Below, one piece after another: positions 33,948 to 62,149 of a DNA stretch of 64,000 nt. A program made the position numbers and the translations under genes. Position 1 is the first letter of the stretch. Each line of letters starts with the position of its first letter. The DNA is from Dimorphilus gyrociliatus (Eukaryota; Animalia; Annelida), in NCBI GenBank assembly GCA_904063045.1, contig CAJFCJ010000022.1:1-64000 (forward strand). Direction: 5' to 3'. A model generated the notes under the pieces. It had not been told where the DNA came from. It did no database searches and saw only the letters and a list, made by a program, of their open reading frames with translations.

Positions 33948-36900
33948 TTAAACATTAACTTTATCATCCTCGCAATCGCTGATCAGTATATGGCAGTTTT
34001 TGCCTGTAAATCCAGCATCGCAAGTACAGAGGTATCCGTCTTTAAGTTGAGTACAAACTCCATTATTCAGACAGGGATTAGGAATACAGCTCTTTACTTC
34101 AGTTTCACAGTCTTTTCCGGTGAAACCTGCCTCGCAGGTACATTCGTATCCAGTTGGCTTGTTAATGCAAGTTGCTCCATTCAAACAAGGACACGATTCA
34201 CAGTAATCGATGATTTCATCACAGTTCTTGCCAGTATAGCCGTCGTCACAAATACATTGGTAGTTGTTAACTTCATTTATACATGTTGCACCGTTCATGC
34301 ACGGATCCGATTTACAGTTGTTAATAATGATGCAGCAATCTTTACCAGTATATCCAGGTTTGCATTGACATGCGAAATCATCAATCAAATTTTCACAAGT
34401 ACCGCCATGTAAACAAGGTTGTGATTCGCAGTTGTCAATAATTTGAGAACAATCCTTTCCTGTATATCCAGCTTTGCAAATACAATGATAGTCGTTAACC
34501 AAGTTCATACAGGTTCCATCATTTAGGCAGGGAGCAACATCACAGTTATCAATAATATCACAACAATCTTTTCCGGTGTATCCAGGTAGGCATGTGCATG
34601 TAAAGTCGTTTAATTTGTTACTACAAGTTCCTCCATGTTTGCATGGATTAGGTTGACAATTGTCAGTCATTTCTTCGCAATTTTTACCTTCGTAGCCGGC
34701 TGGACAATTGCATTCGTAAGCATTTTCGAGGTCATAACAAGTTCCTCCGTTTATGCAGGGATTCGAAGCGCATTCGTCAATGTCTAGTAAAGTATAAACA
34801 TTAATACAAATAATTATATATACAATTATCTTGCTTACCTTCACCGCAGTTTGTTCCTGTCCATCCTGGTTTACATCTACAGATGTAACCATCTACTCTG
34901 TCTTCACAGGTACCGCCGTTCTTACACGGGTTAGAAGCGCATTCGTCAATTTCCTGGTCACAATTCTTTCCAGTCCATCCAGAGTTACAACAGCATTCAT
35001 AATCATTAAGTAGATCTTTGCATGTTGCTCCGTTTCTGCATGGGTTCTCTGCACAATCGTCAATGTTATCGCCGCAATCCTTTCCAGTCCATCCAGCAAC
35101 ACAGGTACATTTGAAGTCATGAACAAGATCAGTACAAGTTCCTCCATTCAAACATGGTTTTGATAGACAATCGTCAATATTTTCATCGCAGTTTTTGTTC
35201 GTCCACCCTGGTGCGCATATGCACTGGTAGTCGTCTACTAAGTCTTTACAAGTTGCTCCATTCTTACAGGGTTTCGCTTTACAGTCATTAATATTATCGC
35301 CGCAATCTTTTCCGTTCCATCCAGGTGTACAGTCGCATTTGAAGTCGTCAATTAGGTCTGTACAACTACCACCGTTTAAGCATGGGTTTGATGCGCATTC
35401 GTTTATGTTAGTTTCGCAATTTCTTCCAGTATATCCAGGTTTGCAGAAACATTGGTAATCATCAACAAGATCCTTACAAGTGCCTCCGTTTACACACGGT
35501 TTGCCCTTGCAGTTATTGATATTTTCGCAGCAATCTTTACCAGTCCATCCAGGTAAGCAGGTACATTTGAAGTCGTGAACAAGATCAGTGCAAGTTCCAC
35601 CATTCAAACATGGCTTAGATTCACAATCGTCAATGTTTGTTTCGCAGTTGCGACCGGTATAGCCAGGTACACAGATACATTGATAGTCATTTACAAGATC
35701 TTTGCATGTTGCTCCATTCTTGCATGGATTTTCTAAACAGTTGTCAATATTAGTATGACAGTTCTTTCCAGTCCATCCTGGTTTACAGTCGCATTTGTAG
35801 TCGTCAAGAAGGTCTGTGCAAGTACCGCCATTCTCACAGGGATTTGAAGCACATTCATTGATATTAATTTGACAGTTAGGTCCAGTATAACCTGGCTCAC
35901 AGCAACATTCATAGCCGTTGAGAAGATCTTTGCAAGTGCCTCCATTATGACATGGATTTGATGCACAATCATCGATATTTTCTTTGCAATTCTTTCCAGT
36001 CCATCCGGAGGGGCATGTGCATCTGTAACCGTTAACAAGATCTCTGCAGGTTCCTCCATTTTCACATGGTCCGGATGCGCAATCGTCGATGTTATTTTCG
36101 CAATTTTTACCAGTCCATCCAGGTTCAACAACGCAGAAACATCTGTAATTGTTAACAAGATCCATACAAATACCACTGTGTTGACAAGGATTGGATTTAC
36201 AATCATCAATGTTTTCTCCACAATCTTTATCCGTCCATCCAGGTTTGCAGTTGCAGTTGTAGTCATCAATAAGATCAGTGCAAGCTCCGCCGTTCTTACA
36301 TGGATTAGAAGCACATTCATTGATGTTAGTCTCACAGTTCTTGCCAGTATATCCTGATTGACAACAGCACTCGTATCCCATGTGAAGATCTTTGCAGGTA
36401 CCTCCATTTTTGCAGGGGCCAGATGCACAATCATCAATATTATCTCCGCAGTCCTTACCAGTCCATCCCTGGGGACAAGTACACTTAAAGTCGCGATGGA
36501 GATCTTCGCATATGCCTCCATTCAAACAAGGCAAAGATGCACAGTCATCGATATTTTCTTCGCAATTTTCTCCAGTCCATCCTGGTCTACAAACACACTG
36601 ATAGTCATTCACTTTGTCGAGGCAAGTACCACCATTTCGGCACGGATTTTCAACACAATCATCAACGTTGTCACAACAGTCCTTGCCAGTCCATCCAGGA
36701 GTGCAAACACATCTGAAGTCATCGATTAAATCAGTACAACTGCCTCCATTCAAACAGGGGTTGGGTTGGCATTCGTTTATATTTGTTTCACAGTTAGTGC
36801 CAGTGAATCCAGGTTTACAGAAGCACTGATAACCGTTGACAAGATCTTTGCATGTTCCACCATTAATACATGGTAAACCTTTACAATCATTGATGTTCTC

Positions 36901-39900
36901 CTCACAGTTCTTTCCAGTGTATCCAACTTTGCAGTTACAATCATAATCATTGATTTTATCAGTACAAGTACCACCGTGCTTACAAGGATTTGAGATGCAT
37001 TCGTTGATGTTTTCATTACACAAGCGACCTGTCCAACCATGTTCACAAACACATTCATAGTTGTTTATATGGTCGACACAAGCAGCAGCATTAATGCAAG
37101 GCTTAGACGCACATTCGTCGATATCGTCACAGCAATCCTTTCCAGTCCAGCCAGGAGCACATGTGCATCTGAAATCATTAACTAGATCATGGCAAATTCC
37201 ATTGTGTTGACATGGGTTTGGTTTGCAATCATCAATGTTTTCATCGCAATGTTCACCAGTCCAGCCAGCGGCACAAATACATTGGTAATCATTCACAAGA
37301 TCTCTACATGTAGCTCCATTCTTGCACGGATTTGGTTTACACTCGTTTACATTCTCTTCACAAATTCTGCCCATCCAACCATGTTGACAAACACATTCAA
37401 ATCTGTTGACCTTGTCTACACAGGTTCCACCATTCTTACACGGGGATGAATCGCACTCATTGATATTATTTCCGCATGTCTTTCCAGTCCATCCAGGAGC
37501 GCAATTACAATCGAAATCATTGACTAAGTCATAGCAACTACCACCATTTTGACAAGGGTTTTCCATACAATCATCGACATTATCGCAACAGTCTTTTCCA
37601 GTCCATCCCGACGTACAGACACACTTGAAATCGTTCACAAGATCAGTACAACTACCACCATTCAAACATGGGTTTGGTTTACAGTCATCGATATTTATAT
37701 CACATATTGTTCCAGTATAACCTGGTACGCAAATACATTGATAGTTGTTCACCAAATCTTTGCAGGTAGCTCCATTTTTACACGGGTTTTCTATGCAATC
37801 ATCTATATTTATTTCACACATTTTTCCAGTGTATCCAGGGGGACACAAACAACTATAACCATTGATCTCATCAAAGCAAGTTCCGCCATGTCTGCAAGGC
37901 GTGGACAAACATTCGTTAATGTTGATTTCGCAATTCTTTCCAGTCCATCCTGGTTTACATACACATTGATAATCATTTACTTTGTCAAGACAAAGTGCAG
38001 CGTTATGACACGGATTTTCAGCACAATCATCGATGTTATCACAACAATCTTTTCCAGTCCAACCAGGTGTACAAGCACACTGGAAGTCATCAACAAGATC
38101 AGTACAGGTTCCACCGTTCAAACATGGTTTTGGTATACAGTCATCAATATTTTCGTCGCAATGACGACCAGTGTATCCAGACGAACAGATACATTGATAA
38201 TCATTCACCAAGTCTTTACATGTAGCTCCGTTCTTGCAAGGAGACTCAACGCAATCGTCAATATTGATTTCACAATTCTTTCCAGTATATCCAGGATTGC
38301 AAGTACATTTGTAATCGTTAATGAGATCTTGGCAAGTACCACCATGTCTGCACGGATTCGAAGAACATTCAATGATGTTTACACCACAGTTCTTTCCGGT
38401 CCAACCCGGTGGACAACCGCATTCATAACCATTTGGAAGATCGTAGCAAGTACCACCGTTTTTACATGGGTTTTCTAGACATTCGTTGACATCTTCACAG
38501 CAGTCTTTTCCAGTCCATCCAGGATTACAAATACATCTAAAGTCATTAACCTTATCTTGGCAAGTACCACCGTTTAAGCAGGGATTGGATGCGCAATCGT
38601 CAATGTTTTCACCGCAATCTTGGCCAGTCCAACCAGCAGCACAAATACACTGGTAGTCGTTTACAAGATCTTTACATGTAGCTCCGTTCTTACATGGGTT
38701 TTCTGCGCATTCGTTAACATTATCTTCACAGATTCTGCCAGCCCAGCCATGTGGACAAGTACATTCAAAACCATTCACTTTATCAAAACAAGTTCCACCG
38801 TGTTTGCAAGGATTAGATGCGCATTCGTCAATATTGATATCACAATTCTTTCCTATCCAACCAGCTTTACAAACGCATTTATAATCATTTACTTTATCTA
38901 GACATTCTGCTTCATTCTTGCATGGATTTTCAGCACAATCGTCGATATTTTCACAACAATCTTTTCCAGTCCAACCAGCTGTGCAGGTACAACTGAAGTC
39001 ATCAACCAAGTCTTGGCAAGTTCCACCGTTTTGACATGGGTTGGGTTTGCAGTCATCGATATCGATTTCGCATTTTGTACCTGTGTATCCCGATGCACAG
39101 ATACATTTATAATCGTCAATAAGATCTTTACAAGTAGCCCCATTTTTACAAGGGTTTTCAGCACATTCATCAATATTGATTTCGCAACTCTTGCCTGTAT
39201 AACCTGGAGCGCAATTGCACGAGTAATCGTTACTTCCATCGACGCAGGTACCGCTATGACGACATGGTTGAGATGCACATTCGTTAATATTTGTTTCACA
39301 GTCTTTTCCAGTCCATCCAGGAACGCAAGTACAACTATAATCATTAACCAAATCGAAGCATGTACCACCATTTTTACATGGATTTTCAACACAATCGTCA
39401 ACATTTTCACAACAATCTTTGCCAGTCCAGCCAGGTCGACAAATACATCTAAAGTCATCAATAAGATCTTGACAAGTACCGCCATTCAAACATGGGTTTG
39501 GTTTACAATCATTTATATCAATGTCACATATTTCACCAGTGTATCCGGATGCGCAAATACATTTATATCCATTCACAAGATCTTTGCATGTAGCTCCGTT
39601 CTTGCAAGGATTTTCTGCACAATCGTCAATATTGATTTCACAATTCTTTCCAGTATATCCAGGATTACAAGTACATTTGTAATCGTTAATGAGATCTTGG
39701 CAAGTACCACCATGTCTGCACGGATTCGAAGAACATTCGTTGATTTCTTGGCCGCAGTTCTTTCCAGTCCAACCAGGCATACAACCACAATAGTATCCAT
39801 TCTCTTGATCGTAGCAAGTACCACCGTTTTTACATGGGTTTTCTAGACATTCGTTGATATCTTCACAACAGTCTTTGCCAGTCCATCCAGCTGTACAAGC

Positions 39901-42900
39901 ACATTCAAAGTCATTGACAAGGTCTTTGCAAGTACCACCATTAAGGCAAGGTTGAGGGAAGCAATCGTCAATGTTTTCACCGCAATCTTGTCCAGTCCAA
40001 CCAGCGGCACAAATACATTGGTAGTCGTTTACAAGATCTCTGCATGTAGCTCCGTTTTTACATGGGTTTTCTGCGCATTCGTTAACATTTTCTTCACAGA
40101 TTCTACCAGCCCAGCCTTTGGGACACGTACAATCGTAACCGTTTACTCTGTCGATACAGGTTCCGCCGTGTTTACATGGGATGGAAGCACATTCGTCAAT
40201 ATTGATATCACAATTCTTTCCAGTCCATCCTGGTTTGCAGATGCATTGGTAATCGTTTACCTTATCAAGACATTCACCTTGATTTCTGCATGGATTTTCA
40301 GCACAGTCATCGATGTTATCACAACAATCTTTTCCAGTCCAACCAGGCAAACATTGACAACTGAAGTCATCAACGAGATCTGTACATGTTCCGCCATTCA
40401 AACATGGGTTGGGTTTGCAGTCATCGATATCGATTTCACAATTTCGGCCAGTGTAACCAGAATCGCAAATACATTGATAATCATTTACCAAATCTTTGCA
40501 AGTAGCTCCATTCTTACAAGGGTTTTCTTTGCAATCATTGATATTCCAGCCACATCTTTTTCCTGAAAATCCTGGTGGGCATGTGCAAGAATAATCATTT
40601 AGTTTGTCGGTACAACTACCGCCATTAAGGCATGGCTTCGATGCACATTCATCAATATCAATTTCGCAGTTTCGGCCTGTATAACCAGGTATACATGTGC
40701 AGACGTAGTCATTTATCAAATCGTAGCAGGTGGCGCCATTTATGCACGGGTTTTCAGCGCAATCGTTTATGTTATCACAACAATCTTTTCCTGTCCATCC
40801 AGCTACACAAGAACATTGGAAATCATTAACCAGATCGGTACAGGTTCCACCATTCAAACAAGGACTGGATTCACATTCATTGATGTCAGTTTGGCAATTT
40901 GTTCCAGTATAACCAGGAGCACAAATGCATTGGTAACCATTTACTAAATCTTTGCAAGTAGCACCATTTTTGCATGGATTTTCGGCGCAGTCGTCTATAT
41001 TTTTTTCGCAAAGTGGTCCAGTATAGCCAGGTTGACATGTACAGACAAAGCCATTTATTTGATCCCGACAAGTTCCGCCATTTCTGCACGGATCTGAAAC
41101 ACATTCATCAATTGGAACATCACAATTTTCTCCCATCCAACCAGGAGCACAATCACAATAATATCCATTGACCTTATCATAACATGTTCCTCCATTCTTG
41201 CAAGGATTTTCAATACATTCATCGATGTCGTCACAACAGTCCTTACCAGTCCATCCTGGTGGACAATTACATAGGAAGTCGTTTACAAGGTCTTTGCATG
41301 TACCACCATTTAAGCATGGATTCGGTGCACAATCATCAATGTTTTCACCACAATCTTCACCAGTCCAACCGGCAGCACAAATACATTGGTAGTCGTTTAC
41401 AAGATCTTTACACGTAGCTCCATTCTTACACGGGTTTTCTGCGCATTCGTTAACATTATCTTCACAGATTCTACCAGCCCAGCCATGTACACAGGTACAC
41501 TCATAACCATTGACCTTATCAAGACAAGTTCCACCATGTTTACAAGGATTAGACGCACATTCATCGATATCGATATCGCAATTCTTTCCAGTCCAACCAG
41601 CTTTACAAACGCATTGGTAATCATTAATTTTGTCGAGGCATACAGCACCGTTCTTGCATGGGTTTTCAGCACAGTCATCAATGTTGTCGCAGCAATCTTT
41701 TCCAGTCCAGCCAGGTCGACAAATACATCTGAAATCATCAACTAAATCTTGACAAGTTCCACCATTATCACAGGGATTAGGTGAACAATCATCAACATCA
41801 ATGTCACAAATTCTTCCCACATATCCAGCTGCACAAATACACTGGAAATCATTTACAAGATCTTTACATGTTGCGCCATTCTTGCAAGGATTTTCAATGC
41901 AATCGTCAATATCAATTTCACAGCTCTTTCCAGTGAACCCTTCACGACAGTCGCATAAATAGTCATTTACTCTGTCTCTGCAAGTACCGCCATTTCGACA
42001 AGGGGAAGAGGCACATTCGTTAATGTTGGTTTCACAATCCTTTCCAGTCCATCCTGGAACACAGGTGCAAGCATAGTTGTTGATCAAATCGTAACAAGTT
42101 GCACCGTTTTTACATGGACCATTAGCGCAGTCATCGATGTTATCACAGCAATCTTTACCGGTCCAACCAGGGGTACATGCACACTGGAAGTCATCAACAA
42201 GATCAGTACAGGTTCCACCATTCAAACATGGGTTTGGTTTACAGTCATCAATATTTTCGTCGCAATGACGACCAGTGTATCCAGACGAACAGATACATTG
42301 ATAATCATTCACCAAGTCTTTACATGTAGCTCCGTTCTTGCAAGGAGACTCAACGCAATCGTCAATATTGATTTCACAATTCTTTCCAGTATATCCAGGA
42401 TTGCAAGTACATTTGTAATCGTTAATGAGATCTTGGCAAGTACCACCATGTCTGCACGGATTCGAAGAACATTCAATGATGTTTACACCACAGTTCTTTC
42501 CGGTCCAACCCGGTGGACAACCGCATTCATAACCATTTAGAAGATCGTAGCAAGTACCACCGTTTTTACATGGGTTTTCTAGACATTCGTTGACATCTTC
42601 ACAACAATCTTTGCCAGTCCATCCAGGATTACATATACATCTAAAGTCATTAACCTTATCTTGGCAAGTACCACCGTTTAAGCAGGGATTGGATGCGCAA
42701 TCGTCAATGTTTTCACCGCAATCTTGGCCAGTCCAACCAGCAGCACAAATACATTGATAATCGTTTACAAGATCTCTGCATGTAGCCCCATTCTTACATG
42801 GGTTTCCTGCGCATTCGTTAACATTATCTTCGCAAATTCTACCAGCCCAGCCTTTGGGACAAGTACAATCGTAACCGTTTACTCTGTCGATACAGGTTCC

Positions 42901-45900
42901 GCCGTGTTTGCATGGGTTGGAAGCACATTCATCAATATTGATATCACAGTTCTTTCCAGTCCATCCTGCTTCGCAGACACATTGGTAATCGTTTACCTTA
43001 TCAAGACATTCACCTTGATTTCTGCATGGATTTTCAGCACAGTCATCGATGTTATCACAACAATCTTTTCCAGTCCAACCAGGCAAACATTGACAACTGA
43101 AGTCATCAACGAGATCTGTACATGTTCCGCCATTCAAACATGGGTTGGGTTTGCAGTCATCGATATCGATTTCACAATTTCGACCTGTGTAACCAGAATC
43201 GCAAATACATTGATAATCGTTTACCAAATCTTTGCAAGTTCCTCCATTTTTACAAGGGTTTTCAGCGCACTCATCAATATTGATTTCGCAACTCTTGCCT
43301 GTATAACCTGGAGCGCAATTGCACGAGTAATCGTTTTCGCCATCTGTGCAAGTACCGCTATGACGGCATGGTTGAGATGAACATTCATTAATGTTTGTTT
43401 CACAGTCTTTTCCAGTCCATCCGGGAAGACATTTACAAGTATAATCATTAACCAAATCGAAGCATGTACCACCATTTTTACATGGATTTTCAACACAATC
43501 GTCAACATTGTCACAACAATCTTTGCCAGTCCAGCCAGGTCGACAAATACATCTAAAGTCATCAATAAGATCTTGACAAGTTCCACCATTCAAACATGGG
43601 TTTGGTTTACAATCATCAATATTTTCGTCGCAATGACGACCAGTGTATCCAGAGGAACAGATACATTGATAATCATTAACCAAGTCTTTACATGTTCCTC
43701 CGTTGTTACAAGGATTTTCAGCACATTCGTCAATATTGATTTCACAATTCTTTCCAGTATATCCAGGATTACAAGTACATTTGTAATCGTTTATAAGATC
43801 TTGGCAAGTACCACCATGTCTGCACGGATTCGAGGAACATTCGTTGATTTCTTGACCGCAGTTCTTTCCAGTCCAACCAGGCATACAACCACAATAGTAT
43901 CCATTCTCTTGATCGTAGCAAGTACCACCGTTTTTACATGGGTTTTCTAGACATTCGTTGATATCGTCACAACAGTCTTTGCCAGTCCATCCAGCTGTAC
44001 AGGCACACTCAAAGTCATCGACAAGGTCTTTGCAAGTACCACCATTAAGGCAAGGTTGAGAGAAGCAATCGTCAATGTTTTCACCGCAATCTTCACCAGT
44101 CCAACCAGCAGCACAAATACATTGGTAGTCGTTTATAAGGTCTTTGCATGTAGCTCCGTTCTTACATGGGTTTTCTGCGCATTCGTTAACATTATCTTCA
44201 CAGATTCTACCAGCCCAGCCTTTATGACATGTACAATCGTAACCATTTACTCTGTCAATACAAGTTCCGCCGTGTTTGCATGGGTTGGAAGCACATTCGT
44301 CAATATTGATATCACAATTCTTTCCAGTCCATCCTGGTTTGCAGACGCATTCGTAATCGTTAACCAAGTCTAAACATTTGCCTTGATTCTTACATGGATT
44401 TTCAGCACAGTCATCGATGTTATCACAACAATCTTTTCCAGTCCAACCAGGCAAACATTGACAACTGAAGTCATCAACGAGATCTGTACATGTTCCGCCA
44501 TTCAAACATGGGTTGGGTTTGCAGTCATCGATATCGATTTCACAATTGCGACCGGTGTAGCCGTAATCGCAAATACATTGATAATCATTTACCAAATCTT
44601 TGCAAGTTCCTCCATTTTTACAAGGGTTTTCAGCACATTCATCAATATTGATTTCGCAACTCTTGCCTGTATAACCTGGAGCGCAATTGCACGAGTAATC
44701 GTTTTCGCCATCTGTGCAGGTACCGCTATGACGGCATGGTTGAGATGAACATTCATTAATGTTTGTTTCACAGTCTTTTCCAGTCCATCCGGGAAGACAT
44801 TTACAAGTATAGTCATTAACCAAATCGAAACATGTACCACCATTTTTACATGGATTTTCAACACAATCGTCAACATTATCACAACAATCTTTGCCAGTCC
44901 AGCCAGGTCGACAAATACATCTAAAGTCATCAATAAGATCTTGACAAGTTCCACCATTCAAACATGGGTTTGGCTTGCAGTCATCTATGTCAGTTTGACA
45001 ATTTCGACCAGTATACCCGGATGGACAAATACATTGATAATCATTAACCAAGTCTTTACAGGTTCCTCCGTTCTTACAAGGATTTTCAGCACAGTCGTCA
45101 ATATTAAATTCACAATTCTTTCCAGTATATCCAGGATTACAAGTACATTTGTAATCGTTTATGAGATCTTGGCAAGTACCACCATGTCTGCACGGATTCG
45201 AGGAACATTCGTTGATTTCTTGACCGCAGTTCTTTCCAGTCCAACCAGGCATACAACCACAATAGTATCCATTCTCTTGATCGTAGCAAGTACCACCGTT
45301 TTTACATGGGTTTTCTAGACATTCGTTGATATCGTCACAACAGTCTTTGCCAGTCCATCCAGCTGTACAAGCACACTCAAAGTCATCGACAAGGTCTTTG
45401 CAAGTACCACCATTAAGGCAAGGTTGAGAGAAGCAATCGTCAATGTTTTCACCGCAATCTTCACCAGTCCAACCGGCAGCACAAATACATTGGTAGTCGT
45501 TTACAAGATCTTTGCAAGTAGCTCCGTTTTTACAAGGGTTTTCTGCGCATTCGTTAACATTATCTTCACAGATTCTACCAGCCCAACCTTTGGGACACGT
45601 ACAATCGTAACCGTTTACTCTATCAATACAGGTTCCGCCGTGTTTGCATGGGTTGGAAGCACATTCATCAATATTGATATCACAGTTCTTTCCAGTCCAT
45701 CCTGGTTTGCAGATGCATTGGTAATCGTTTACCTTATCAAGACATTCACCTTGATTTCTGCATGGATTTTCAGCACAGTCATCGATGTTATCACAACAAT
45801 CTTTTCCAGTCCAACCAGGCAAACATTGACAACTGAAGTCATCAACGAGATCTGTACAAGTTCCGCCATTCAAACATGGGTTGGGTTTGCAGTCATCGAT

Positions 45901-48900
45901 ATCGATTTCACAATTTCGACCTGTGTAGCCGTAATCGCAAATACATTGATAATCATTTACCAAATCTTTGCAAGTTCCTCCATTTTTACAAGGGTTTTCA
46001 GCGCACTCATCAATATTGATTTCGCAACTCTTGCCTGTATAACCAGGAGCGCAAATGCACGAGTAATCGTTTACGCCATCTGTGCAGGTACCGCTATGAC
46101 GGCATGGTTGAGATGAACATTCATTAATGTTTGTTTCACAGTCTTTTCCAGTCCATCCGGGAAGACATTTACAAGTATAGTCATTAACCAAATCGAAGCA
46201 TGTACCACCATTTTTACATGGATTTTCAACACAATCGTTAACATTATCACAACAATCTTTGCCAGTCCAGCCAGGTCGACAAATACATCTAAAGTCATCA
46301 ATAAGATCTTGACAAGTTCCACCATTCAAACACGGGTTTGGTTTACAATCATCAATATTTTCGTCGCAATGACGACCAGTGTATCCAGACAAACAGATAC
46401 ATTGATAATCATTCACCAAGTCTTTGCATGTTCCTCCATTGTTGCATGGATTTTCAGCACATTCATCAATATTGATTTCACAATTCTTTCCAGTATATCC
46501 AGGATTACAAGTACATTTGTAATCGTTTATGAGATCTTGGCAAGTACCACCATGTCTGCACGGATTCGAGGAACATTCGTTGATTTCTTGACCGCAGTTC
46601 TTTCCAGTCCAACCAGGCATACAACCACAATAGTATCCATTCTCTTGATCGTAGCAAGTACCACCGTTTTTACATGGGTTTTCTAGACATTCGTTGATAT
46701 CGTCACAACAGTCTTTGCCAGTCCATCCAGCTGTACAGGCACACTCAAAGTCATCGACAAGGTCTTTGCAAGTACCACCATTAAGGCAAGGTTGAGAGAA
46801 GCAGTCGTCAATGTTTTCACCACAATCTTCACCAGTCCAACCGGCAGCACAAATACATTGGTAGTCGTTTATAAGGTCTTTGCATGTAGCTCCGTTCTTA
46901 CATGGGTTTTCTGCGCATTCGTTAACATTATCTTCACAAATTCTACCAGCCCAGCCATGTACACAGGTACACTCATAGCCATTGACCTTATCAAGACAAG
47001 TTCCACCGTGTTTACAAGGATTTGACGCACATTCATCAACATTGATATCACAGTTCTTTCCAGTCCATCCTGGTTTGCAGACGCATTCGTAATCGTTAAC
47101 CAAGTCTAAACATTTGCCTTGATTCTTACATGGATTTTCAGCACAGTCATCGATGTTATCACAACAATCTTTTCCAGTCCAACCAGGCAAACATTGACAA
47201 CTGAAGTCATCAACGAGATCTGTACATGTTCCGCCATTCAAACATGGGTTGGGTTTGCAGTCATCGATATCGATTTCACAATTGCGACCGGTGTAGCCGT
47301 AATCGCAAATACATTGATAATCATTTACCAAATCTTTGCAAGTTCCTCCATTTTTACAAGGGTTTTCAGCGCACTCATCAATATTGATTTCGCAACTCTT
47401 GCCTGTATAACCTGGAGCGCAATTGCACGAGTAATCGTTTACGCCATCTATGCAGATACCGCTATGACGGCATGGTTGAGATGAACATTCATTAATGTTT
47501 GTTTCACAGTCTTTTCCAGTCCATCCGGGAAGACATTTACAAGTATAATCATTAACCAAATCGAAGCATGTACCACCATTTTTACATGGATTTTCAACAC
47601 AATCGTCAACATTATCACAACAATCTTTGCCAGTCCAGCCAGGTCGACAAATACATCTAAAGTCATCAATAAGATCTTGACAAGTTCCACCATTCAAACA
47701 TGGGTTTGGTTTACAATCATCAATATTTTCATCGCAATGACGACCAGTGTATCCAGAGGAACAGATACATTGATAATCATTCACCAAGTCTTTACATGTT
47801 CCTCCATTGTTGCATGGATTTTCAGCACATTCGTCAATATTGATTTCACAATTCTCACCAGTATATCCAGGATTACAAGTACATTTGTAAGCATTAATGA
47901 GATCTTGGCAAGTACCACCATGTCTGCACGGATTCGAAGAACATTCGTTGATTTCTTGACCACAGTTTTTTCCAGTCCAGCCAGGTGGACAACCGCAATC
48001 ATAACCGTTTGGAAGATCGTAGCAAGTACCACCGTTTTTACATGGGTTTTCTAGACATTCGTTGATATCGTCACAACAGTCTTTGCCAGTCCATCCAGCT
48101 GTACAGGCACACTCAAAGTCATCGACAAGGTCTTTGCAAGTACCACCATTAAGGCAAGGTTGAGAGAAGCAGTCGTCAATGTTTTCACCGCAATCTTCAC
48201 CAGTCCAACCGGCAGCACAAATACATTGGTAGTCGTTTATAAGGTCTTTGCATGTAGCTCCGTTCTTACATGGGTTTTCTGCGCATTCGTTAACATTATC
48301 TTCACAAATTCTACCAGCCCAGCCATGTACACAGGTACACTCATAGCCATTGACCTTATCAAGACAAGTTCCACCGTGTTTACAAGGATTTGACGCACAT
48401 TCATCAACATTGATATCACAGTTCTTTCCAGTCCATCCTGGTTTGCAGACGCATTCGTAATCGTTAACCAAGTCTAAACATTTGCCTTGATTCTTACATG
48501 GATTTTCAGCACAGTCATCGATGTTATCACAACAATCTTTTCCAGTCCAACCAGGCAAACATTGACAACTGAAGTCATCAACGAGATCTGTACAAGTTCC
48601 GCCATTCAAACATGGGTTGGGTTTGCAGTCATCGATATCGATTTCACAATTGCGACCGGTGTAGCCGTAATCGCAAATACATTGATAATCGTTTACCAAA
48701 TCTTTGCAAGTAGCTCCATTTTTACAAGGGTTTTCAGCACATTCATCAATATTGATTTCACACATTTTACCGGTGTAGCCAGGGGCGCAGTTACAATCAT
48801 AATCAGCTATTTTATCGGAACAGGTGCCAGCGTGTCGACAAGGGTTAGGAGAACAGTCGTTTATGTTTATTTCACAGTTTGTTCCTGTATATCCCATGGG

Positions 48901-51830
48901 GCAATCGCAAGCGTAGCTATTTGGTAAATCATAGCACACGCCTCCATTTTTGCAAGGATTTGCCTGACATTCATCAATGTCAATGCAACAGTCCTTTCCG
49001 GTCCATCCAGGTAAGCAGGTGCATTCAAAATCATTGATACGGTCAGTACACGTTCCACCGTTCAAGCAAGGGCTTGACTGGCAGTCGTCAATATCTATCG
49101 AACATAAAGGTCCAGTCCATCCAGGTGTGCAGATACATTGGAAGGAGTTGATGAGATCTTTGCAAGTGGCTCCATTCTGGCATGGTGCTTCAATGCATTC
49201 GTTGATATTTATTTCACAGCTTTTTCCAGTGTAGCCTTGTTGACATTCACATGTATAGTCATTAACTTGATCTGTGCAAGTACCACCATGTCGGCATGGA
49301 TTTGAAAGGCATTCATTTATGTTTATTTGACAATTTTGTCCAGAATAACCAGGAGCACATTCACAAGCGTAGCCGTTTTCTTTGTCATGACAAGTTGCTC
49401 CATTCAGGCATGGGTTTTTATCGCATTCATTAATGTTGTCACAACAATCTTTTCCAGCCCAACCAGCTGTACAGAAACAACTGAAGTCATCAACAAGATC
49501 ATTACAACTTCCACCATTTAAACATGGGTTTGGTTTGCAATCATCAATGTTTTCACCGCAATCCGACCCAGTCCAGCCAGCGGCACAAATGCACTGATAA
49601 GCGTTTACGAGATCTTTACATGTAGCTCCGTTTTTACATGGGTTTTCTGCGCATTCGTTAACATTATCTTCACAGATTCTTCCAGCCCAACCTTGAGGAC
49701 AGGTGCATTCAAAACCATTTATTCTGTCGTGGCACGAACCACCATTTTTACAAGGTGAAGATTGACACTCGTCGATGTTTTCCATACAATTTCGTCCAGT
49801 GTAGCCTGGTTTGCAAGCGCACTTGTAATCGTTGACCAAATCATAACAGGTTCCGCCATTTCCGCATGGGTTTTCAGCACACTCGTTGATATTTTCGCAA
49901 CAATCTTTACCTCTCCATCCATCTAAACAGAAACACTGGAAATCATTCACACGGCCTTCACAAGTGCCACCATTCAAGCATGGATTGGGTTCACACATGT
50001 TGATTACTTCTCCGCAGTCAATACCTGTATATCCAGCGGCGCATTCGCAGATATATCCATTTATTTTATCATGGCAAGTGGCGCCGTTTTTGCAAGGCTG
50101 TGATAAACATTCGTCGATTTCTTTTTCGCAACGAACTCCAGTGTATCCTGGCTCACACGAGCATGTGAAAGAATTTGGACTGCTGGTACAGGTACCATGA
50201 AAACATGGATCAGGTTTACAGTTATTGATCAGAGTTTCACAATTCGTTCCAGTATATCCTTCAGGGCATTCGCAGTCGTATCTATTCTTTCCATTCTTAC
50301 AAGTTCCACCATTTTGACAAGGATTAGATTCACATTCATTAATGTCGACGTCACAGTTTTTACCAGTATATCCTGGCTTGCAAATACATTGGTAGGTTGT
50401 TGGTGTAGACACGCAGCCGAGGGAGTGTACACAAGGGTCAGGGTTACAATGGTCAATTGGTGTTTCACAATGAAGTCCAGTGAAACCGGCAGGACACACA
50501 CATTCATAACCAATTCTTAAATCTTTACATGTACCACCATTGAAGCAAGGATTCGGATCGCAACGATTGACTTCAGTTTCACAGTTGATACCAGTGAAAT
50601 CGATAGGACATATACATTTGTACGAAGAAAGACGATTCTCACATGTTCCGCCGTTGGTACAAGGATTCGATTTACAAGGATTTTTTTCAGTTTCACAATG
50701 TACCCCAGTATATTCCGATGGACAGACGCATTTATATCCATTGACTTCAGGGATGCATGTAGCTCCATTTTGACATGGGTTCGAATTACAATAGTTGATC
50801 ATTGTTTCACAATTTTTACCCGTGAATCCAACGGGGCATTGACATTCATAATCATTTGTAAATTCTATGCATGTTGCACCATTCTTGCATGGATCCGGTG
50901 AGCATGTACGTTTATCTGAAACACAAACATATATTACACCATTGATTTAAAAAAGAATCTATACACATACTTGTTGCCTTGCAAGTGTCCTCCAAGATTA
51001 TGTTCTTGAATTTTTCAATGTCGTTAAAGTTAGCAATTCTTATAATTTTCGATAAGTCGGATGCGATGGCTTGGATTTCGTTTTCATTTACGGAGCCAAC
51101 AGGAATAGCGAATACAGTAACATTAAGAGATGTATGGACTTTTAATTGTTCGGCTGTAGGTATGGTTAAATGCGGATTTTCATTTGAGGCACCATCAGTG
51201 AGAACTAGAGCGATATTCGGGACATCTAATCTGTCACCTCCGCTGGGTGTGAAAACTTCATCCATTGCCTTTTGCAATCCACCTGCAGTGTTTGTTCGAC
51301 CAGAATCATAACCTATATTTTCAATGGCAGTCAAAATTGATTGACGGTCGGAAAGGTCATCCAAGTCGAAAATAAGTGTACAATCTGTAGCAAAAGTGAT
51401 TGCCGCTACTCTCGTATGAACGAGTGAAATGTCGAACGCTGCAGTAACATCACGAATGAATTTCTTCTGTATGGCAAAATTTGCTTGACCAATAGATCCA
51501 CTGGCATCGATGATCCAGCATATATCGACTGGGCTGCACACTGAAAAACGATGCAAACATAGTATAAAAATGACTGTAAATAGATATTCACTTACCTATT
51601 TCACACTTTTTTCCAACGTAGCCGAGTTTACATTCGCATTCAAAGTCATTTTCGTGATTAATACATTTTACTTTTCCTTCATCAAGACATGGATTAGATG
51701 CACAGTGATCAGTAGCCAGGGACACGAGTCGTTCATCACAATTTTCACCTGCACATTTCAGTTTTCTTTCGTGCACAGGTGAAGTGGTGATTTGTCCCAC
51801 AAGAAGACAAACCAAAATTACCCTATACAT
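33948..51830 (-). CDS. Giant secreted SP-EGF-vWA-(EGF)~148 protein, ~5,905 aa (gene A)
   Basis: Exons 51830-51596, 51540-50971 (vWA with intact MIDAS DASGS/T/TDG), 50915-34839 (16,077 nt) and 34783-33948 sum to 17,718 nt in one frame. Mostly Ca-binding-type EGFs; no TM, LNR, ANK, CUB or avidin domain. Confidence 0.9.
34839..50915 (-). repeat. Hierarchical coding tandem repeat (114/456/1368 nt)
   Basis: EGF unit 114 nt; KDCC motif every 4 EGFs; shadow ORFs recur at 43573/44941/46309/47677 and 44056/45424/46792/48160, exactly 1368 nt apart. Confidence 0.92.
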
Positions 51831-52234: not shown

Positions 52235-53470
52235 CTCTAAGATTTGCTCAAAAATTATCGGATGATTGAAATATAGGCCTCAGTGTTCACAAAAAAAATC
52301 AATTTTTTAACTTTTTTTTTAAAGAAAATATGAAAAATTAAAGAAAATATGGTAATCTTTTAAAGAAAAGTCAGTCTTAAAAGTATTAAGATTCTAGACT
52401 AGTCGTAAATTATCATTTCAAAATAGTATAGACATTTTTAATTTTTCGCGAATGGAATAATATCTTATCTTATCTTTTTGAGAATAGGGAATTTATTATT
52501 TATTGTACATGCATTATGATAGTTATGGATGTTTAAGTTGATTAACAATGATATATCAGATAATTGAATTAGTTTAAAGTCTCTTCCAGAAGTAATATAA
52601 GATTGTTATAGATTAATTAAGTGAACTTTCATTCCCTCTGTCAGTTTTTTTCCCATCTATTCACGAATAACTTATTAAGTGAAGAGTATATTAACTCCCA
52701 TTCCAAGATATCTTCAAAGTGAATGTTAATAAACTACACTAAATTTGTATATATGTACGTGTAAATGATCTTATAATCAGTTATTAAGGTTTTTGGAGGA
52801 AGAAGAACTTGTGGAAAGTTTAACAGACAAGATAAATTCACTAAATAGAGTATAATATATAAATGATAATAACAAAACAATAATCATGATTTATTAAAAC
52901 TTTATTAAAATCATATAGAAAAATCATTATTCGTAGTATATAGATGTTTTTTATTGAAATTGTTATATAAAACGTTACAGTTTTTTGGGTAATTACGTGT
53001 CAGCGTTCATTTTTTACGGACAGACAGATTTTTTTTAAAGCTACATGTCGAGCAATGTCATGTTGTTTTTGTCCCCAAAAAGAGAAGAGAGCATTTGCCA
53101 CGTTGAAACTTCAAAAAAAACTGTTTTTGAGCAATGAAAACACAGGTGTATAACGAAATTTTCTTGTCCGCCCCCATACGAGGACAGTCGGAGACAAGAG
53201 TTCATAGCGTCAATTGCTGTAAGTTATTTTAAGTATAATTTTTCATTATTCTACTGATAAAACTATAAAATAAAACTTAATATTTCATTGATACGGTTGA
53301 TAATAATGTATTTTTTTCATATTTTTATATAAACAAATAGGACAAGCAGTATTCACCAAAGTTTTGCGGAAACAAAAGTCTCACTTTGGGAAGGTAAACA
53401 TCTATTTAAATAAAATTTGTATATGAATAAATTTTAAAATGCGTTTTTCATCCATAGAGTAAACTCTTTG

Positions 53471-53968
53471 ATGATGCTTACGATTGTTGTATTGTGTATA
53501 GTTGGACAAGCAATTTCGGCTCCCTTCGGTAATCGTAGATTAATTATAGATGAGGAGGAGGTAGCCGGAAGATTTTCAGAAATGATAATGAAACCATGCG
53601 ATTCCAGTCCATGCTTTAATGGTGGGACCTGCGAAAATTTGAACGACGGTAGCAATTTTGAATGTAGGTGTTTGCCAACTTATTTAGGCACACAATGCAA
53701 CATCAAGGTGAACTTTTGTCTGTCGGAACCTTGCATGAATGGAGCAACCTGCAGCAATACCTCTACGGGACCTTTGTGTACTTGTGCCGCGGGATTCACC
53801 GGCACTGTATGTCAACATTTGACCAACAGTTGCAATTCTAATCCTTGTTTAAACAATGGAATTTGCATAGAATCAGAGAGTAGTTATGTTTGTTCGTGTA
53901 AAGCCTGTTTCTTTGGTAGAGACTGTGAGAGAATTGTAGTTGATTGTCAGTCTGATATTGTAATGTAA
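53471..53968 (+). CDS. Small secreted 3-EGF protein (gene C, inverted paralogue)
   Basis: Signal peptide LCIVGQAISAP resembles [11 protein letters not shown] (A) and CLLLGQVIVS (B); three EGFs; upstream TATATAAA (~53327) and a 5'UTR intron 53394-53456. Confidence 0.82.
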   Translation: MMLTIVVLCIVGQAISAPFGNRRLIIDEEEVAGRFSEMIMKPCDSSPCFNGGTCENLNDGSNFECRCLPTYLGTQCNIKVNFCLSEPCMNGATCSNTSTGPLCTCAAGFTGTVCQHLTNSCNSNPCLNNGICIESESSYVCSCKACFFGRDCERIVVDCQSDIVM

Positions 53969-55618: not shown

Positions 55619-58600
55619 TTACTTTTGTTTTTGGCATCTCTTTCCTTTCCAAGGTTTCTTACATTTGCATTTGTAACCATATTTATAATTCTTACAAATG
55701 CCACCATTCAAACAGGGAGAACTACTGCAAGCATTCTTCGATTTTTCACAATATTTTCCTTTATATCCCTTCGGACACGAACATTTGAATCCACCTTTAT
55801 AATCTTTACACTTTCCACCATTTTTGCAGGGGTTAGGATTACAGGTACCCTTTTTGAGCTCGCAATGTTTTCCATAATATCCTTTCTTACAATAACACTT
55901 GTAAAAGAAGAAACCTATTGGCTTACATTTTCCACCATTTTTACAAGGCTTAGATTTGCATGGATACTTTGCAATAATAGGTTTTTCACAATATTTTCCA
56001 GTATATCCTTTCGGACACGAACATTTCACGCCACCTTTATATTGTGTACACTTTCCACCGTTTTTGCAGGGATTAGGTTTACAGGTATCCTTTTTGAGCT
56101 CGCAATGTTTTCCATAATATCCTTTTGGACAGTAACACTTGTAAAAGAAGAAACTTATTGGCTTACATTTTCCACCATTTTTACAAGGATTAGGTTTGCA
56201 TGGATACTTAATAGGCTTTTCACAATATTTTCCAATATATCCTTTCGGACACGAACATTTCACGCCACCTTTATATTGTGTACACTTTCCACCGTTTTTG
56301 CAGGGATTAGGTTTACAGGTATCCTTTTTGAGCTCGCAATGTTTTCCATAATATCCTTTTGGACAGTAACACTTGTAAAAGAAGAAACTTATTGGCTTAC
56401 ATTTTCCACCATTTTTACAAGGATTAGGTTTGCATGGATACTTAATAGGCTTTTCACAATATTTTCCAATATATCCCTTCGGACACGAACATTTGACTAT
56501 GCCTTTATAATCATTACACTTTCCACCATTTTTACAGGGGTTAGGTTTACAGATATCCTTTTTGTGCTGGCAATGTTTTCCATAATATTCTTGTTTACAT
56601 TTGCAAGAATATTTATTAGTTTGCTCTAGGCAAGTTCCACCATTTTGACAAGGACTCGAGTTACATTCCTTTATATCCTCATCGCAATTTATTCCGGTAT
56701 TTCCCGGACTACATTGACAAGTATAACCATTTACCCCATCTTTACAAGTTCCGCCATTCAAACACGGAGAAGAAGCGCATTCATTAATATTTATCTCGCA
56801 ATCGTCTCCGGAGAAACCAGGTAGACAGTTACATTTATAGCTATTTCCAAATGGTTGACAAACTCCACCATTCTGACAAAAATTTGGGTTACAAGGGTTT
56901 TTGAGCGTACATTTACAAATATCATGAGTTATTTTACTCTTATATTTTCCCAAATCATTGAAACTATCAATGTAAATGACTTTGCTGGCATCACTGGCAA
57001 TTCCTTCAATTTCGGATTTTTTAAAACGAGGCCCTACTGAAACAACAAATATTTTAACGCCAAGTTTTGTAAACATTTTCAATTGATTAGCTGTTGGAAC
57101 GGTCTTGGCCTTATTTTTGTTTGATGGTCCATCCGTGAAAAGAACAACAATATTTGGAATATTTTCTCTCTCTCCATTAGACACTTGAAAAACATGATCC
57201 ATTTCTAATTGAAGAGCATCCGCTGTATTTGTCAATCCACGGGAATATGGAATTGCATCAATTGCAGAAAGAATGCTAGCTCTATTGTTGTAATCATCAA
57301 AGTCGAACCTTAACACCGCTTTAGTTCCAAAAGTAATTGTTCCTATCCGTGTATGCGACGGAGAAATATCAAAAGCATCAGTCAGATCTCTAATGAAGCT
57401 TTTTTGTAAATTGAAGTTTAGATTTCCAAGAGAACCGCTTGTATCTATAATCCAGGAAAGATCCATCGGATTACACTCTAAAAAAAACATACAAATTAAC
57501 AATATCATTCATATTGGTAACATTTGACTTACCAAGGCTACATAACTTTCCAAAAAATCCAGACTTACATTCACAGTAAAAGCCATCTTTAACATTTTTA
57601 CATATACCGCCATTGTTACAAGGATTTGTCGGTTTACAAAAATCTTTAAGTTCGCAATTGCTTCCGGAATATCCAAAAGGACATTTGCATATATAACCAG
57701 ATAGCTGGTCAACACATGTACCACCATTCAAACATGGATTTTTCAAAAAACATTCGTTTTTATGCTCACACTTCTTTCCATAATAACCAGGAGGACATTT
57801 ACATGAATAGCCAAATTTATGACCAAAACATGTACCACCGTTAAAACAGGGATTATTTGGAAAACATAAGTTTTTGAATTCACACTTCTTTCCATAATAA
57901 CCAGGAGGACATTTACAAAAGTAGCCATTTGGTAAATCATTGCATATTCCGCCATTTAGACATGGATTTTTCGGTATACATTCGTTTTTCAGCTCACAAT
58001 GCTTTCCATAATATCCAGGGGGACACTTACAGAAATAACCAGCTTTTTGTTCAATGCATTTACCACCATTATAACATGGATTTTTTGGGAAACAGTTGTG
58101 TTTAAACTCACAATTCTTTCCGTAGAATCCAAGAGGACATTTACAAAAATAGCCATTTGGTAAATCATTGCATATTCCGCCATTTAGACACGGATTTTTC
58201 GGTACACATTCGTTTTTCAGCTCACAATGCTTTCCATAATATCCAGGGGGACACTTACAGAAATAACCAGCTTTTTGTTCAATGCATTTACCACCATTAT
58301 AACATGGATTTTTTGGGAAACAGTTGTATTTAAACTCACAATTTTTTCCATAGAATCCAAGAGGACATTTACAAAAGTAGCCATTTGGTAAATCATTGCA
58401 TATTCCGCCATTGAGACATGGATTTTTCGGTATACATTCGTCTTTCAGCTCGCAATGCTTTCCATAATATCCTAGGGGACACTTACAGATATAGCCAATT
58501 TTTTGATCAATGCATTTACCACCATTATAACATGGATTTGTTGGAAAACATGAGTTTTGTTCCTGACAAAGCTTTCCAAAATATCCAGGAGGACATTTGC

Positions 58601-61600: not shown

Positions 61601-62149
61601 CTAGGTCCGTTCGTGTACCTCCATTGGGAAAAGTGGTAGTTGCAAGCGCGTTTAGAATAAGTTGTTTGTTAGAGTTGAAATCATTCAGATCAAACCTTAC
61701 AATCGCGTTGTGGTCAAAAATAATTGCAGCTACTCGTGTTTTTGTAGGGCCTACATCGAATGAATCGGTAAGGCCTTTAATGAAATCCATTTGCTTTTTA
61801 AAATTGCTAGATCCAATTGACCCACTGCCATCTATAATCCAGCAAAGATCTACTGGAGCGCATTCTGAAACAATAATAAGTGTTTTTAAAGTTATAAAAT
61901 TGAGACGATTGACTTACCGAGCTCACATCGTTTTCCAGCAAAACCAGGTTTACATATGCATTCAAAATCGTTTTTAATATTATTACACTTCACGAACCTT
62001 CCTGCAAAGCAAGGATTTTTGGAACATAAATCAGTTGTCAGGGACACTCTTCCATTTTCAGCAGATGATTCATTCAATACTGAAGTCTCATCACCTAGTG
62101 AAACGATGACTTGCCCCAGAAGGAGACAAACCCATATAACCCGTAACAT
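55619..62149 (-). CDS. Secreted SP-EGF-vWA-(EGF)33-vWA-(EGF)11 protein, ~2,140 aa (gene B)
   Basis: Exons 62149-61918, 61864-57533 and 57477-55619 sum to 6,423 nt in frame with phase-1 GTAAGT/AG introns. Both vWAs have intact MIDAS (DGSGS, DTSGS); the C-terminal EGFs are very K/Y/F/P/G-rich. Confidence 0.9.
58980..60720 (-). repeat. 228-nt (2-EGF) tandem repeat, 7 full copies plus partial flanks
   Basis: Shadow ORFs at 59114, 59342, 59570, 59798, 60026, 60254, 60482, spaced 228 nt; the copies are protein-identical. Confidence 0.95.

What the first reader, a model, noticed from the sequence alone, without database searches (positions are those of the whole stretch)
33948..50000. One spare cysteine every ~4 EGFs, preserved by two different sequence solutions
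Seen: about 33 EGFs end in KDCC (a seventh Cys directly after C6), spaced 4 EGFs apart through most of the array. In the C-terminal region KDCC often becomes KDCG, and three EGFs instead carry YECCC, an extra Cys between C4 and C5 (36361-36369, 35899-35907, 34987-34995), so spacing stays at 3-5 domains. The last exon adds CESCPC and an orphan terminal Cys ([11 protein letters not shown]). Inference: selection maintains regularly spaced free thiols for inter-chain disulfide polymerisation or redox control.
Basis: partly seen in the sequence, partly recalled or inferred. Interest (0 to 1): 0.75.

Follow-up and report, generated by a model that had tools for sequence, protein, structure and literature searches.

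The report
Giant EGF rod with periodic spare cysteines
A tiny marine worm encodes a secreted protein of about 5,900 residues made of 149 EGF modules, in which every fourth module carries one conserved extra cysteine; it probably links the rods covalently, but no thiol chemistry was tested.

Summary
The gene lies on the minus strand and has four exons and three 55-nt phase-1 introns. It encodes a signal peptide, one EGF, a vWA domain, 141 EGFs in a single 16,077-nt exon, then 7 more EGFs.

- **Pattern.** 33 EGFs end in KDCC. Thirty of them fall on exactly every fourth EGF (EGF 9 to 125).
- **C-terminal change.** CESCPC and a tail cysteine are also real.
- **Selection.** The 4-EGF units form ten lineages whose synonymous sites are close to saturation (0.44 identity against 0.35 expected). 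The seventh cysteine is still invariant, while the same position varies freely in two of the other three EGF phases.
- **Rarity.** The motif occurs 5 times in 9,500 EGFs of 366 other proteins, never periodically. It is absent elsewhere in this 78-Mb genome and in three paralogous arrays.

Selection on the cysteine is therefore well supported. The mechanism is inferred from teneurin, fibrillin, scallop Sbp9 and NOTCH3 disease mutants: exposed thiols cross-linking calcium-stiffened rods. I could not test it, because model coordinates and orthologue DNA were not retrievable. Other first-stage notes of this scan cover the same exon but not the cysteines.

The parts
51596..51830 (-). Exon 1: signal peptide, a C-x4-C pair and one EGF. 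It ends in phase 1 at an AG|GTAAGT donor.
   Evidence: ORF translation [13 protein letters not shown]...; sequence read.
50971..51540 (-). Exon 2: von Willebrand factor type A domain with an intact MIDAS-type D-A-S-G-S motif.
   Evidence: Pfam VWA, E 3.3e-35; sequence. The MIDAS motif was judged by inspection.
34839..50915 (-). Exon 3: one uninterrupted 16,077-nt exon encoding 141 Notch-type, mostly calcium-binding EGF domains.
   Evidence: 122 of 141 meet the full cbEGF consensus; Pfam EGF, hEGF and EGF_CA.
36658..49995 (-). Core array: EGF 9 to 125, with 30 D-type EGFs ending G-W-x-G-K-D-C6-C7 at exactly every fourth EGF (456 nt). The units group into a 12-EGF super-repeat.
34942..36657 (-). 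Transition zone, EGF 126 to 140. D-like EGFs here occur about every second domain. Four read KDCG and one keeps KDCC. Three EGFs carry C4-C-C5.
36361..36369 (-). CCC triplet of EGF 128. It follows the KDCG EGF 127.
35899..35907 (-). CCC triplet of EGF 132. Its closest relative is EGF 128 (74% nt), so the two may share one origin.
34987..34995 (-). CCC triplet of EGF 140. It follows the KDCG EGF 139. Its closest relatives are A-type EGFs rather than EGF 128 or 132, so it is probably an independent gain.
33948..34783 (-). Exon 4: EGF 142 to 148, with KDCC at 143 and 145 and CESCPC at 147. The tail [14 protein letters not shown]-stop looks like the first Cys of a truncated further EGF.
   Evidence: Pfam EGF.

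Best explanation
This is an intact gene of the annelid that earlier notes of this scan name as Dimorphilus gyrociliatus. It encodes a secreted protein of about 5,905 residues: signal peptide, EGF, one vWA head, then 148 Notch-type and mostly calcium-binding EGF domains that should form a long stiff rod. The rod is built from an old 4-EGF unit. The fourth (D-type) EGF of each unit carries a 7th cysteine directly after C6, in the turn of the minor hairpin at the junction with the next EGF. Each unit therefore holds 25 cysteines and has no local partner for the extra one. I take these cysteines to be selected, solvent-exposed thiols that form disulfides between chains. They could also react with other thiol-reactive partners. 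Because every site is equivalent at a 4-EGF pitch, molecules could be cross-linked in register or staggered by any multiple of four EGFs, which would give covalent bundles, sheets or a gel. Shown here: the gene model, the pattern, its rarity, and purifying selection on the cysteine. Inferred: exposure of the thiols, the rod geometry over long range, inter-chain bonding, and the tissue role (matrix, adhesive or capsule material).
For: The gene model and pattern rest. Each 4-EGF unit has an odd cysteine count. C7 is invariant across 10 unit lineages with 4-fold-site identity 0.44, against 0.35 at saturation, and 65% amino-acid identity. The codon shows synonymous TGT/TGC variation, and the post-C6 residue is variable in the A and C phases. 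The motif is rare: 5 in 9,500 EGFs elsewhere, none elsewhere in the genome, none in 44 EGFs of the neighbouring paralogue or in a further paralogue. Loss of C7 is accompanied by a new Cys in the next EGF in 2 of 3 cases, with P about 0.003 for that adjacency and 0.0015 for gap preservation. 122 of 141 EGFs meet the full cbEGF consensus. In the AlphaFold model (pLDDT 85), 3-EGF stretches superpose on Notch1 EGF11-13 at 1.6-2.4 A, which argues for stiff junctions. DSSP of the model puts C6-C7 in the turn between the two short strands of the minor hairpin. Precedents from papers: teneurin dimerises through odd-cysteine EGFs 2 and 5 (PMC2185078); adding a cysteine to Notch-type EGFs makes NOTCH3 fragments ladder into disulfide-dependent multimers (PMC8991201); the conserved extra Cys204 of fibrillin is a free thiol and a candidate for intermolecular bonding (PMC3955488); free thiols in the scallop Sbp9 EGF-like array are proposed to give cohesion (PMC6244088).
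Against: No thiol state, exposure or oligomer was measured. Model coordinates could not be read, so accessibility and the azimuth of successive C7 around the rod are unknown. pTM is 0.32, and superposition over 5 EGFs is poor (rmsd 10-14 A), so long-range straightness is not shown. Only one species could be read. Expression and tissue are unknown. Thirty-eight free thiols would normally cause retention in the ER unless they are paired early. In the last exon the spacing drops to 2, and the first 8 EGFs have no spare Cys, so a strict 4-EGF rule is not universal along the protein.
Confidence: 0.45

Rival explanations
1. The thiols are functional but not mainly for homotypic disulfides. They would act as a redox buffer or as nucleophiles that capture quinones or metals from a partner protein, giving cysteinyl-DOPA-type cross-links. 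The neighbouring Lys/Tyr-rich EGF protein could be that partner, as proposed for mussel and scallop holdfast proteins.
For: Gene B lies 5 kb upstream and has the same EGF-vWA-EGF build. It ends in Lys/Tyr/Phe-rich EGFs and has no spare Cys in 44 EGFs. The scallop Sbp9 paper proposes both disulfide and cysteinyl-DOPA links from free thiols of an EGF-like array (PMC6244088). A mussel foot protein EGF structure (PVFP-5, 7qab) is among the sequence-level PDB hits.
Against: There is no evidence of co-expression, of DOPA formation or of a tyrosinase partner. Resemblance to mussel proteins is compositional only. Periodicity is not needed for a redox buffer.
Confidence: 0.2
2. The spare cysteines pair with each other inside one chain. 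The array would fold back, or coil with four EGFs per turn, so that C7 of neighbouring units or of antiparallel segments bond. This would staple a compact shape rather than link molecules.
For: The total number of spare cysteines in the EGF part is even. Long-range geometry of the model is uncertain (pTM 0.32).
Against: 122 of 141 EGFs have the calcium-binding consensus, and the model's 3-EGF stretches match the extended Notch1 EGF11-13 geometry at 1.6-2.4 A. That would place consecutive C7 four domains apart along the rod. The super-repeat is 12 EGFs, or three units, which does not fit pairwise stapling of adjacent units.
Confidence: 0.12
3. The 7th cysteine is a tolerated passenger. It arose once in a 4-EGF unit and was copied by tandem duplication and homogenisation, with no function of its own.
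For: The period equals the duplication unit. Several units are 94-100% identical, which points to recent copies. Four D-like EGFs have lost the cysteine. No paralogue or other species examined has it.
Against: Ten unit lineages have diverged to near-saturation at synonymous sites and all keep it, with synonymous codon changes. The equivalent position varies freely in the A and C phases. An unpaired Cys in Notch-type EGFs is harmful in NOTCH3 (PMC8991201), so neutrality is unlikely. Losses are confined to the C-terminal zone and come with new cysteines nearby.
Confidence: 0.08

Closest known systems
Teneurin (Ten-m/Odz) EGF repeats 2 and 5
   Same: EGF modules with an odd cysteine count, set a fixed number of modules apart in a rod, make covalent inter-chain disulfides (PMC2185078).
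   Different: Teneurin loses a cysteine (C3 replaced by Tyr or Phe, giving 5 Cys) in 2 of 8 EGFs of a type II membrane protein. Here a cysteine is gained (7 Cys) in about 37 of 149 EGFs of a secreted vWA-EGF protein, at a strict 4-EGF period.
NOTCH3 cysteine-altering (CADASIL) variants
   Same: Both have Notch-type EGFs with a 7th cysteine. Recombinant NOTCH3 mutants form disulfide-dependent multimer ladders and carry more free thiols (PMC8991201).
   Different: In NOTCH3 this is a pathogenic accident at one site. Here the state is conserved, periodic and apparently selected.
Scallop byssal protein Sbp9 (49 tandem EGF-like repeats)
   Same: It is a long secreted EGF-like array, with free thiols detected and proposed to cross-link a biomaterial (PMC6244088).
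   Different: Sbp9 repeats are tenascin-type with the canonical six-cysteine pattern and are fused to Calx-beta domains. No periodic extra cysteine is described. Here there is no Calx-beta domain, the head is a vWA domain, and the EGFs are Notch-type and calcium-binding.
Fibrillin-1 hybrid-1 domain Cys204
   Same: It is a conserved additional cysteine, present as a free thiol in a cbEGF-rich rod, and is a candidate for intermolecular disulfides during fibril assembly (PMC3955488).
   Different: It is a single site in a hybrid (TB-like) domain, not in an EGF and not periodic. The present protein has no TB or hybrid domains.
Matrilins and other vWA plus EGF matrix proteins
   Same: They combine a vWA domain and EGF modules in a secreted, network-forming protein (from general knowledge of the family).
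   Different: Matrilins have 1 to 10 EGFs and oligomerise through a C-terminal coiled coil. Here there are 149 EGFs and no coiled coil, and the C-terminus is EGF plus a short Cys-containing tail.

Membership tests
Notch-type calcium-binding EGF array | Six-cysteine EGF pattern with C1-C3, C2-C4, C5-C6 spacing | tested here: met
   141 + 7 + 1 EGFs were parsed by regular expression. Pfam EGF scores E 5e-139 on a 639-residue sample.
Notch-type calcium-binding EGF array | Calcium-binding consensus: [DN]-x-[DN]-[EQD]-C1 together with C3-x-[DN]-x4-[YF]-x-C4 | tested here: met
   122 of 141 EGFs in the giant exon meet it. Pfam EGF_CA scores E 2.4e-29.
Notch-type calcium-binding EGF array | Fold and junction geometry of solved Notch EGF tandems | tested here: met
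   AlphaFold model with pLDDT 85. Foldseek to Notch1 EGF11-13 gives TM 0.86 and rmsd 1.6-2.4 A over 115-123 columns.
Notch receptor | LNR repeats, transmembrane segment and ankyrin repeats after the EGFs | tested here: not met
   The protein ends 14 residues after the last EGF. No such domains appear in Pfam scans of the exons.
Teneurin | Five-cysteine EGFs (C3 lost) at positions 2 and 5 of an 8-EGF stalk in a type II membrane protein | tested here: not met
   The odd EGFs here have 7 Cys, not 5. The protein has a signal peptide and no membrane anchor. The Pfam EGF_TEN hit reflects generic EGF similarity.
Matrilin | C-terminal coiled-coil oligomerisation domain after vWA and EGF modules | tested here: not met
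   The C-terminus is EGF 148 followed by [14 protein letters not shown]-stop.
Scallop Sbp9 / EGFL-CBD family | Calx-beta (CBD) domains fused to a tenascin-type EGF-like array | tested here: not met
   The only non-EGF domain found is vWA. The Sbp9 architecture is taken from PMC6244088.
Covalently polymerising matrix protein (functional class) | Free or inter-chain-bonded cysteines demonstrated biochemically | not testable with these tools
   This needs thiol labelling, non-reducing gels or disulfide mapping.

The most novel reading that the evidence does not exclude
The 4-EGF pitch matches the helical repeat of a calcium-stiffened EGF rod, so all spare thiols face one side. This would make a covalent zipper that lets roughly 0.4-micrometre rods bond in register or at any 4-EGF stagger. 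It would be a previously undescribed assembly principle for an extracellular material, and a natural, constructive use of the same odd-cysteine state that is pathogenic in human NOTCH3.
Probability: 0.25. Interest if true: 0.75.

Novelty: new variant of a known kind. Interest (0 to 1): 0.55.

Why it matters
Odd-cysteine EGF modules are known as rare, isolated devices (teneurin dimerisation) or as disease lesions (NOTCH3 in CADASIL). Here the same state is repeated about 37 times at a fixed pitch and kept by selection in a protein of about 5,900 residues.

If the thiols are exposed, this gives three things:
- a natural model for how Notch-type EGFs tolerate and use a 7th cysteine;
- a candidate building principle for cross-linked biological materials;
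- a defined, easily expressed 4- or 5-EGF unit in which thiol reactivity of such modules can be studied.

If they turn out to be paired within the chain, it would show an unrecognised way of folding long EGF arrays.

Tried and rejected
**Orthologue test, attempted and not completed.**
- Word searches with the N-terminal 700 residues and with the C-terminal 797 residues of the giant exon found only generic EGF arrays at 53% identity or less.
- The whole-library search with the first 739 residues also gave no close relative.
- The vWA exon found one likely orthologue fragment, P0241, at 61% identity, from a Logan assembly of run ERR14224705. It is a reciprocal best match to this gene in the genome and only 43% identical to Gene B.
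- Its 3,091-nt contig carries a following 739-residue ORF that should be the start of the array.

**Other searches.**
- Two degenerate DNA patterns for (WxG)KDCC plus linker plus C1 found nothing in JGI metagenome contigs.
- Paper searches for 'seventh cysteine' with EGF, and for 'extra cysteine' with EGF-like repeats and multimer, found no description of a periodic 7th cysteine.

**Thiol exposure and rod azimuth.** Only confidence, DSSP and Foldseek matches could be used.

**Rejected readings.**
- Assembly artefact or pseudogene: rejected, because a 5,357-codon exon without a stop, with conserved module-specific residues, is not compatible with decay.
- Vicinal C6-C7 disulfide: not favoured, because it would leave C5 unpaired. 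It is not excluded.

**Method note.** The spliced protein was never joined for any search or fold.
Full report
**What is there**

The finding lies in one gene on the minus strand. Reading the splice sites directly gives four exons:
- exon 1, 51830-51596: signal peptide, a C-x4-C pair and one EGF;
- exon 2, 51540-50971: a vWA domain (Pfam E 3.3e-35) with a D-A-S-G-S metal-site motif;
- exon 3, 50915-34839: 16,077 nt without interruption;
- exon 4, 34783-33948.

All three introns are 55 nt and phase 1. The product is about 5,905 residues, with no membrane segment, and ends 14 residues after the last EGF. Earlier notes of this scan name the genome as the annelid Dimorphilus gyrociliatus. I did not test that. 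I handled every exon separately by reference and never joined the spliced protein for a search or a fold.

**Check of the observation**

A scripted parse finds 141 EGFs in the giant exon, 139 of them exactly 38 residues long. 34 of them have seven cysteines.
- KDCC, a cysteine directly after C6, sits at EGF 9, 13, ... 125 without a single exception (30 sites, 456 nt apart), and again at EGF 135.
- Exon 4 adds KDCC at EGF 143 and 145, CESCPC at EGF 147, and a tail [14 protein letters not shown]. The tail looks like the first cysteine of a truncated further EGF.
- Four D-like EGFs read KDCG (127, 129, 137, 139).

The spacing of '3-5' holds to EGF 143 and then becomes 2, 2. The cysteine count is 880 in exon 3, which equals 141 x 6 + 34, and 46 in exon 4.

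**Is it more than duplication?**

The period equals the duplication unit, so periodicity alone proves nothing. The units, however, are old.
- Pairwise nucleotide identity of the thirty 4-EGF units shows three families (a 12-EGF super-repeat) plus singletons. Identity between groups is only 62-75%.
- At a 78% identity threshold, the 29 equal-length units give ten lineages. Their mean amino-acid identity is 65%.
- Identity at 4-fold sites is 0.44, against 0.35 expected at full saturation for this base composition.
- The seventh cysteine is still invariant in all units, with synonymous variation of its codon (TGT 26, TGC 3).
- The residue after C6 in the A and C phases of the unit is a free mix of E, D, G, Q, M, N and S, so the position as such is tolerant.
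- The D-type EGF also keeps its own invariant signature, D-F ... G-W-x-G-K-D-C-C.

Together these indicate purifying selection on the cysteine rather than recent copying.

**Rarity**

- In 9,500 EGFs parsed from 366 other large EGF-array proteins returned by the searches, C6-C7 occurs five times and never more than once per protein. These proteins come from rotifers, echinoderms, molluscs, cnidarians, and vertebrate eyes-shut, crumbs and jagged. C4-C-C5 occurs 24 times among them.
- The DNA pattern for W-x-G-K-D-C-C matches 31 times in the 78-Mb genome, all inside this gene.
- The neighbouring paralogue (Gene B, 44 EGFs) and a further paralogue about 70 kb away have no odd-cysteine EGF.
- Two degenerate patterns found nothing in metagenome contigs.

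**The C-terminal switch**

From EGF 126 onward, D-like EGFs occur about every second domain and most have Gly in place of C7.
- Two of the three C4-C-C5 EGFs directly follow such a KDCG EGF (127 then 128; 139 then 140).
- EGF 128 and 132 are each other's closest relatives (74% nt), so they may share one origin.
- EGF 140 groups with A-type EGFs instead, so the new cysteine probably arose at least twice.
- EGF 139 (KDCG) is the closest relative of EGF 135 (KDCC) at 82%, so that loss is comparatively recent.
- Placing three extra cysteines at random keeps the largest gap at 5 or less in 0.15% of trials. It puts two or more of them right after a KDCG EGF in 0.3% of trials. Both tests were designed after seeing the data.

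In the model's DSSP ladder, C6-C7 lie in the turn of the minor hairpin. The x of C4-x-C5 in the next EGF pairs with the residue just before C3, which is bonded to C1. Both solutions therefore sit near the same EGF-EGF junction, perhaps 1-2 nm apart. This is an inference from topology, not a measured distance.

**Shape**

122 of 141 EGFs meet the complete calcium-binding consensus. Most also carry the O-fucose (123), EOGT (120) or O-glucose (52) consensus typical of Notch EGFs. A ten-EGF stretch was folded with its 27 in-register internal paralogues as the alignment. It gives mean pLDDT 85, and 3-EGF stretches superpose on Notch1 EGF11-13 at 1.6-2.4 A. Over five EGFs the fit is poor and pTM is 0.32, so long-range straightness is not established.

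**Mechanism**

Each 4-EGF unit has 25 cysteines and no local partner for the extra one. In stiff Notch-type junctions the next spare cysteine is four domains away.

The best-supported reading is that these are exposed thiols bonding between chains. Because all sites are equivalent at one pitch, the bonds could form in register or staggered, with the vWA head offering a second, metal-dependent contact. Four precedents support this by analogy:
- teneurin dimerises through its odd-cysteine EGFs 2 and 5 (PMC2185078);
- NOTCH3 fragments given a 7th cysteine ladder into disulfide-dependent multimers (PMC8991201);
- the extra Cys204 of fibrillin is a free thiol and a candidate for fibril assembly (PMC3955488);
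- free thiols in the scallop Sbp9 EGF-like array are proposed to give cohesion through disulfides or cysteinyl-DOPA (PMC6244088).

The rivals are thiol chemistry with a partner such as the adjacent Lys/Tyr-rich Gene B, intramolecular stapling of a folded-back array, and neutral hitch-hiking. I rate them at 0.20, 0.12 and 0.08, against 0.45 for inter-chain cross-linking.

**Orthologues**

This is the main gap. Searches with the array found only generic relatives at 53% identity or less. The vWA exon found one fragment, P0241, at 61% identity in a Logan assembly of run ERR14224705. It is the reciprocal best match of this gene in the genome and only 43% identical to Gene B. Its contig continues into a 739-residue ORF that should cover EGFs 1 to 19. 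Whether EGFs 9, 13 and 17 of that species end in CC is the most direct refutation test.

**Verdict**

- Selection on the cysteine is well supported from within the array.
- The proposed use, inter-chain disulfides or redox chemistry, is plausible and has good precedents, but it is untested.

I class this as a new variant of a known kind: odd-cysteine EGF modules used for covalent assembly, here by gain of a cysteine, at a fixed pitch and on an unprecedented scale. No paper found in the held library describes a periodic seventh cysteine in an EGF array.

Noticed in passing
window 51541-51595, 50916-50970, 34784-34838: All three introns of the gene are exactly 55 nt and phase 1, each falling at a module boundary.
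   Followed up: partly
window 55619-62100 (minus): Gene B appears to be one gene: signal peptide, EGF, vWA, 33 EGFs, a second vWA, then 11 EGFs with a Lys/Tyr/Phe-rich tail. The second vWA exon has no signal-peptide exon of its own. None of its 44 EGFs has a spare cysteine.
   Followed up: partly
window 53468-53968 (plus): A small secreted protein with 3 EGFs. EGF3 has an extra Cys in the C5-C6 loop (C-K-A-C-F-F-G-R-D-C). The C-terminal tail RIVVD-C-QSDIVM resembles the tail of the giant protein ([14 protein letters not shown]). The Cys-containing tail may therefore be a shared family feature, and here the two extra cysteines could pair with each other.
   Followed up: no
G000:C22:122400-127300 (locus L039 4415-9243, plus): A fourth family member (EGF, vWA at 47% identity to P0241, then EGFs). 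Its EGFs lie in separate small exons rather than one giant exon, and none has a spare cysteine.
   Followed up: partly
window 37500-49000 (minus): The 4-EGF units form a 12-EGF super-repeat. Some copies are 98-100% identical and others 62-70%, which indicates patchy recent duplication or conversion on top of an old array.
   Followed up: partly
window 34839-50915 (minus): Most EGFs carry Notch-type glycosylation consensus sites: O-fucose in 123 of 141, EOGT O-GlcNAc in 120 and O-glucose in 52. This predicts a heavily O-glycosylated rod.
   Followed up: no
P0241 (Logan run ERR14224705, contig of 3,091 nt): Likely orthologue of the vWA exon in another species (61% identity), followed after a gap of about 64 nt by an ORF of at least 739 residues. 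The vWA-then-giant-exon layout therefore seems conserved.
   Followed up: partly
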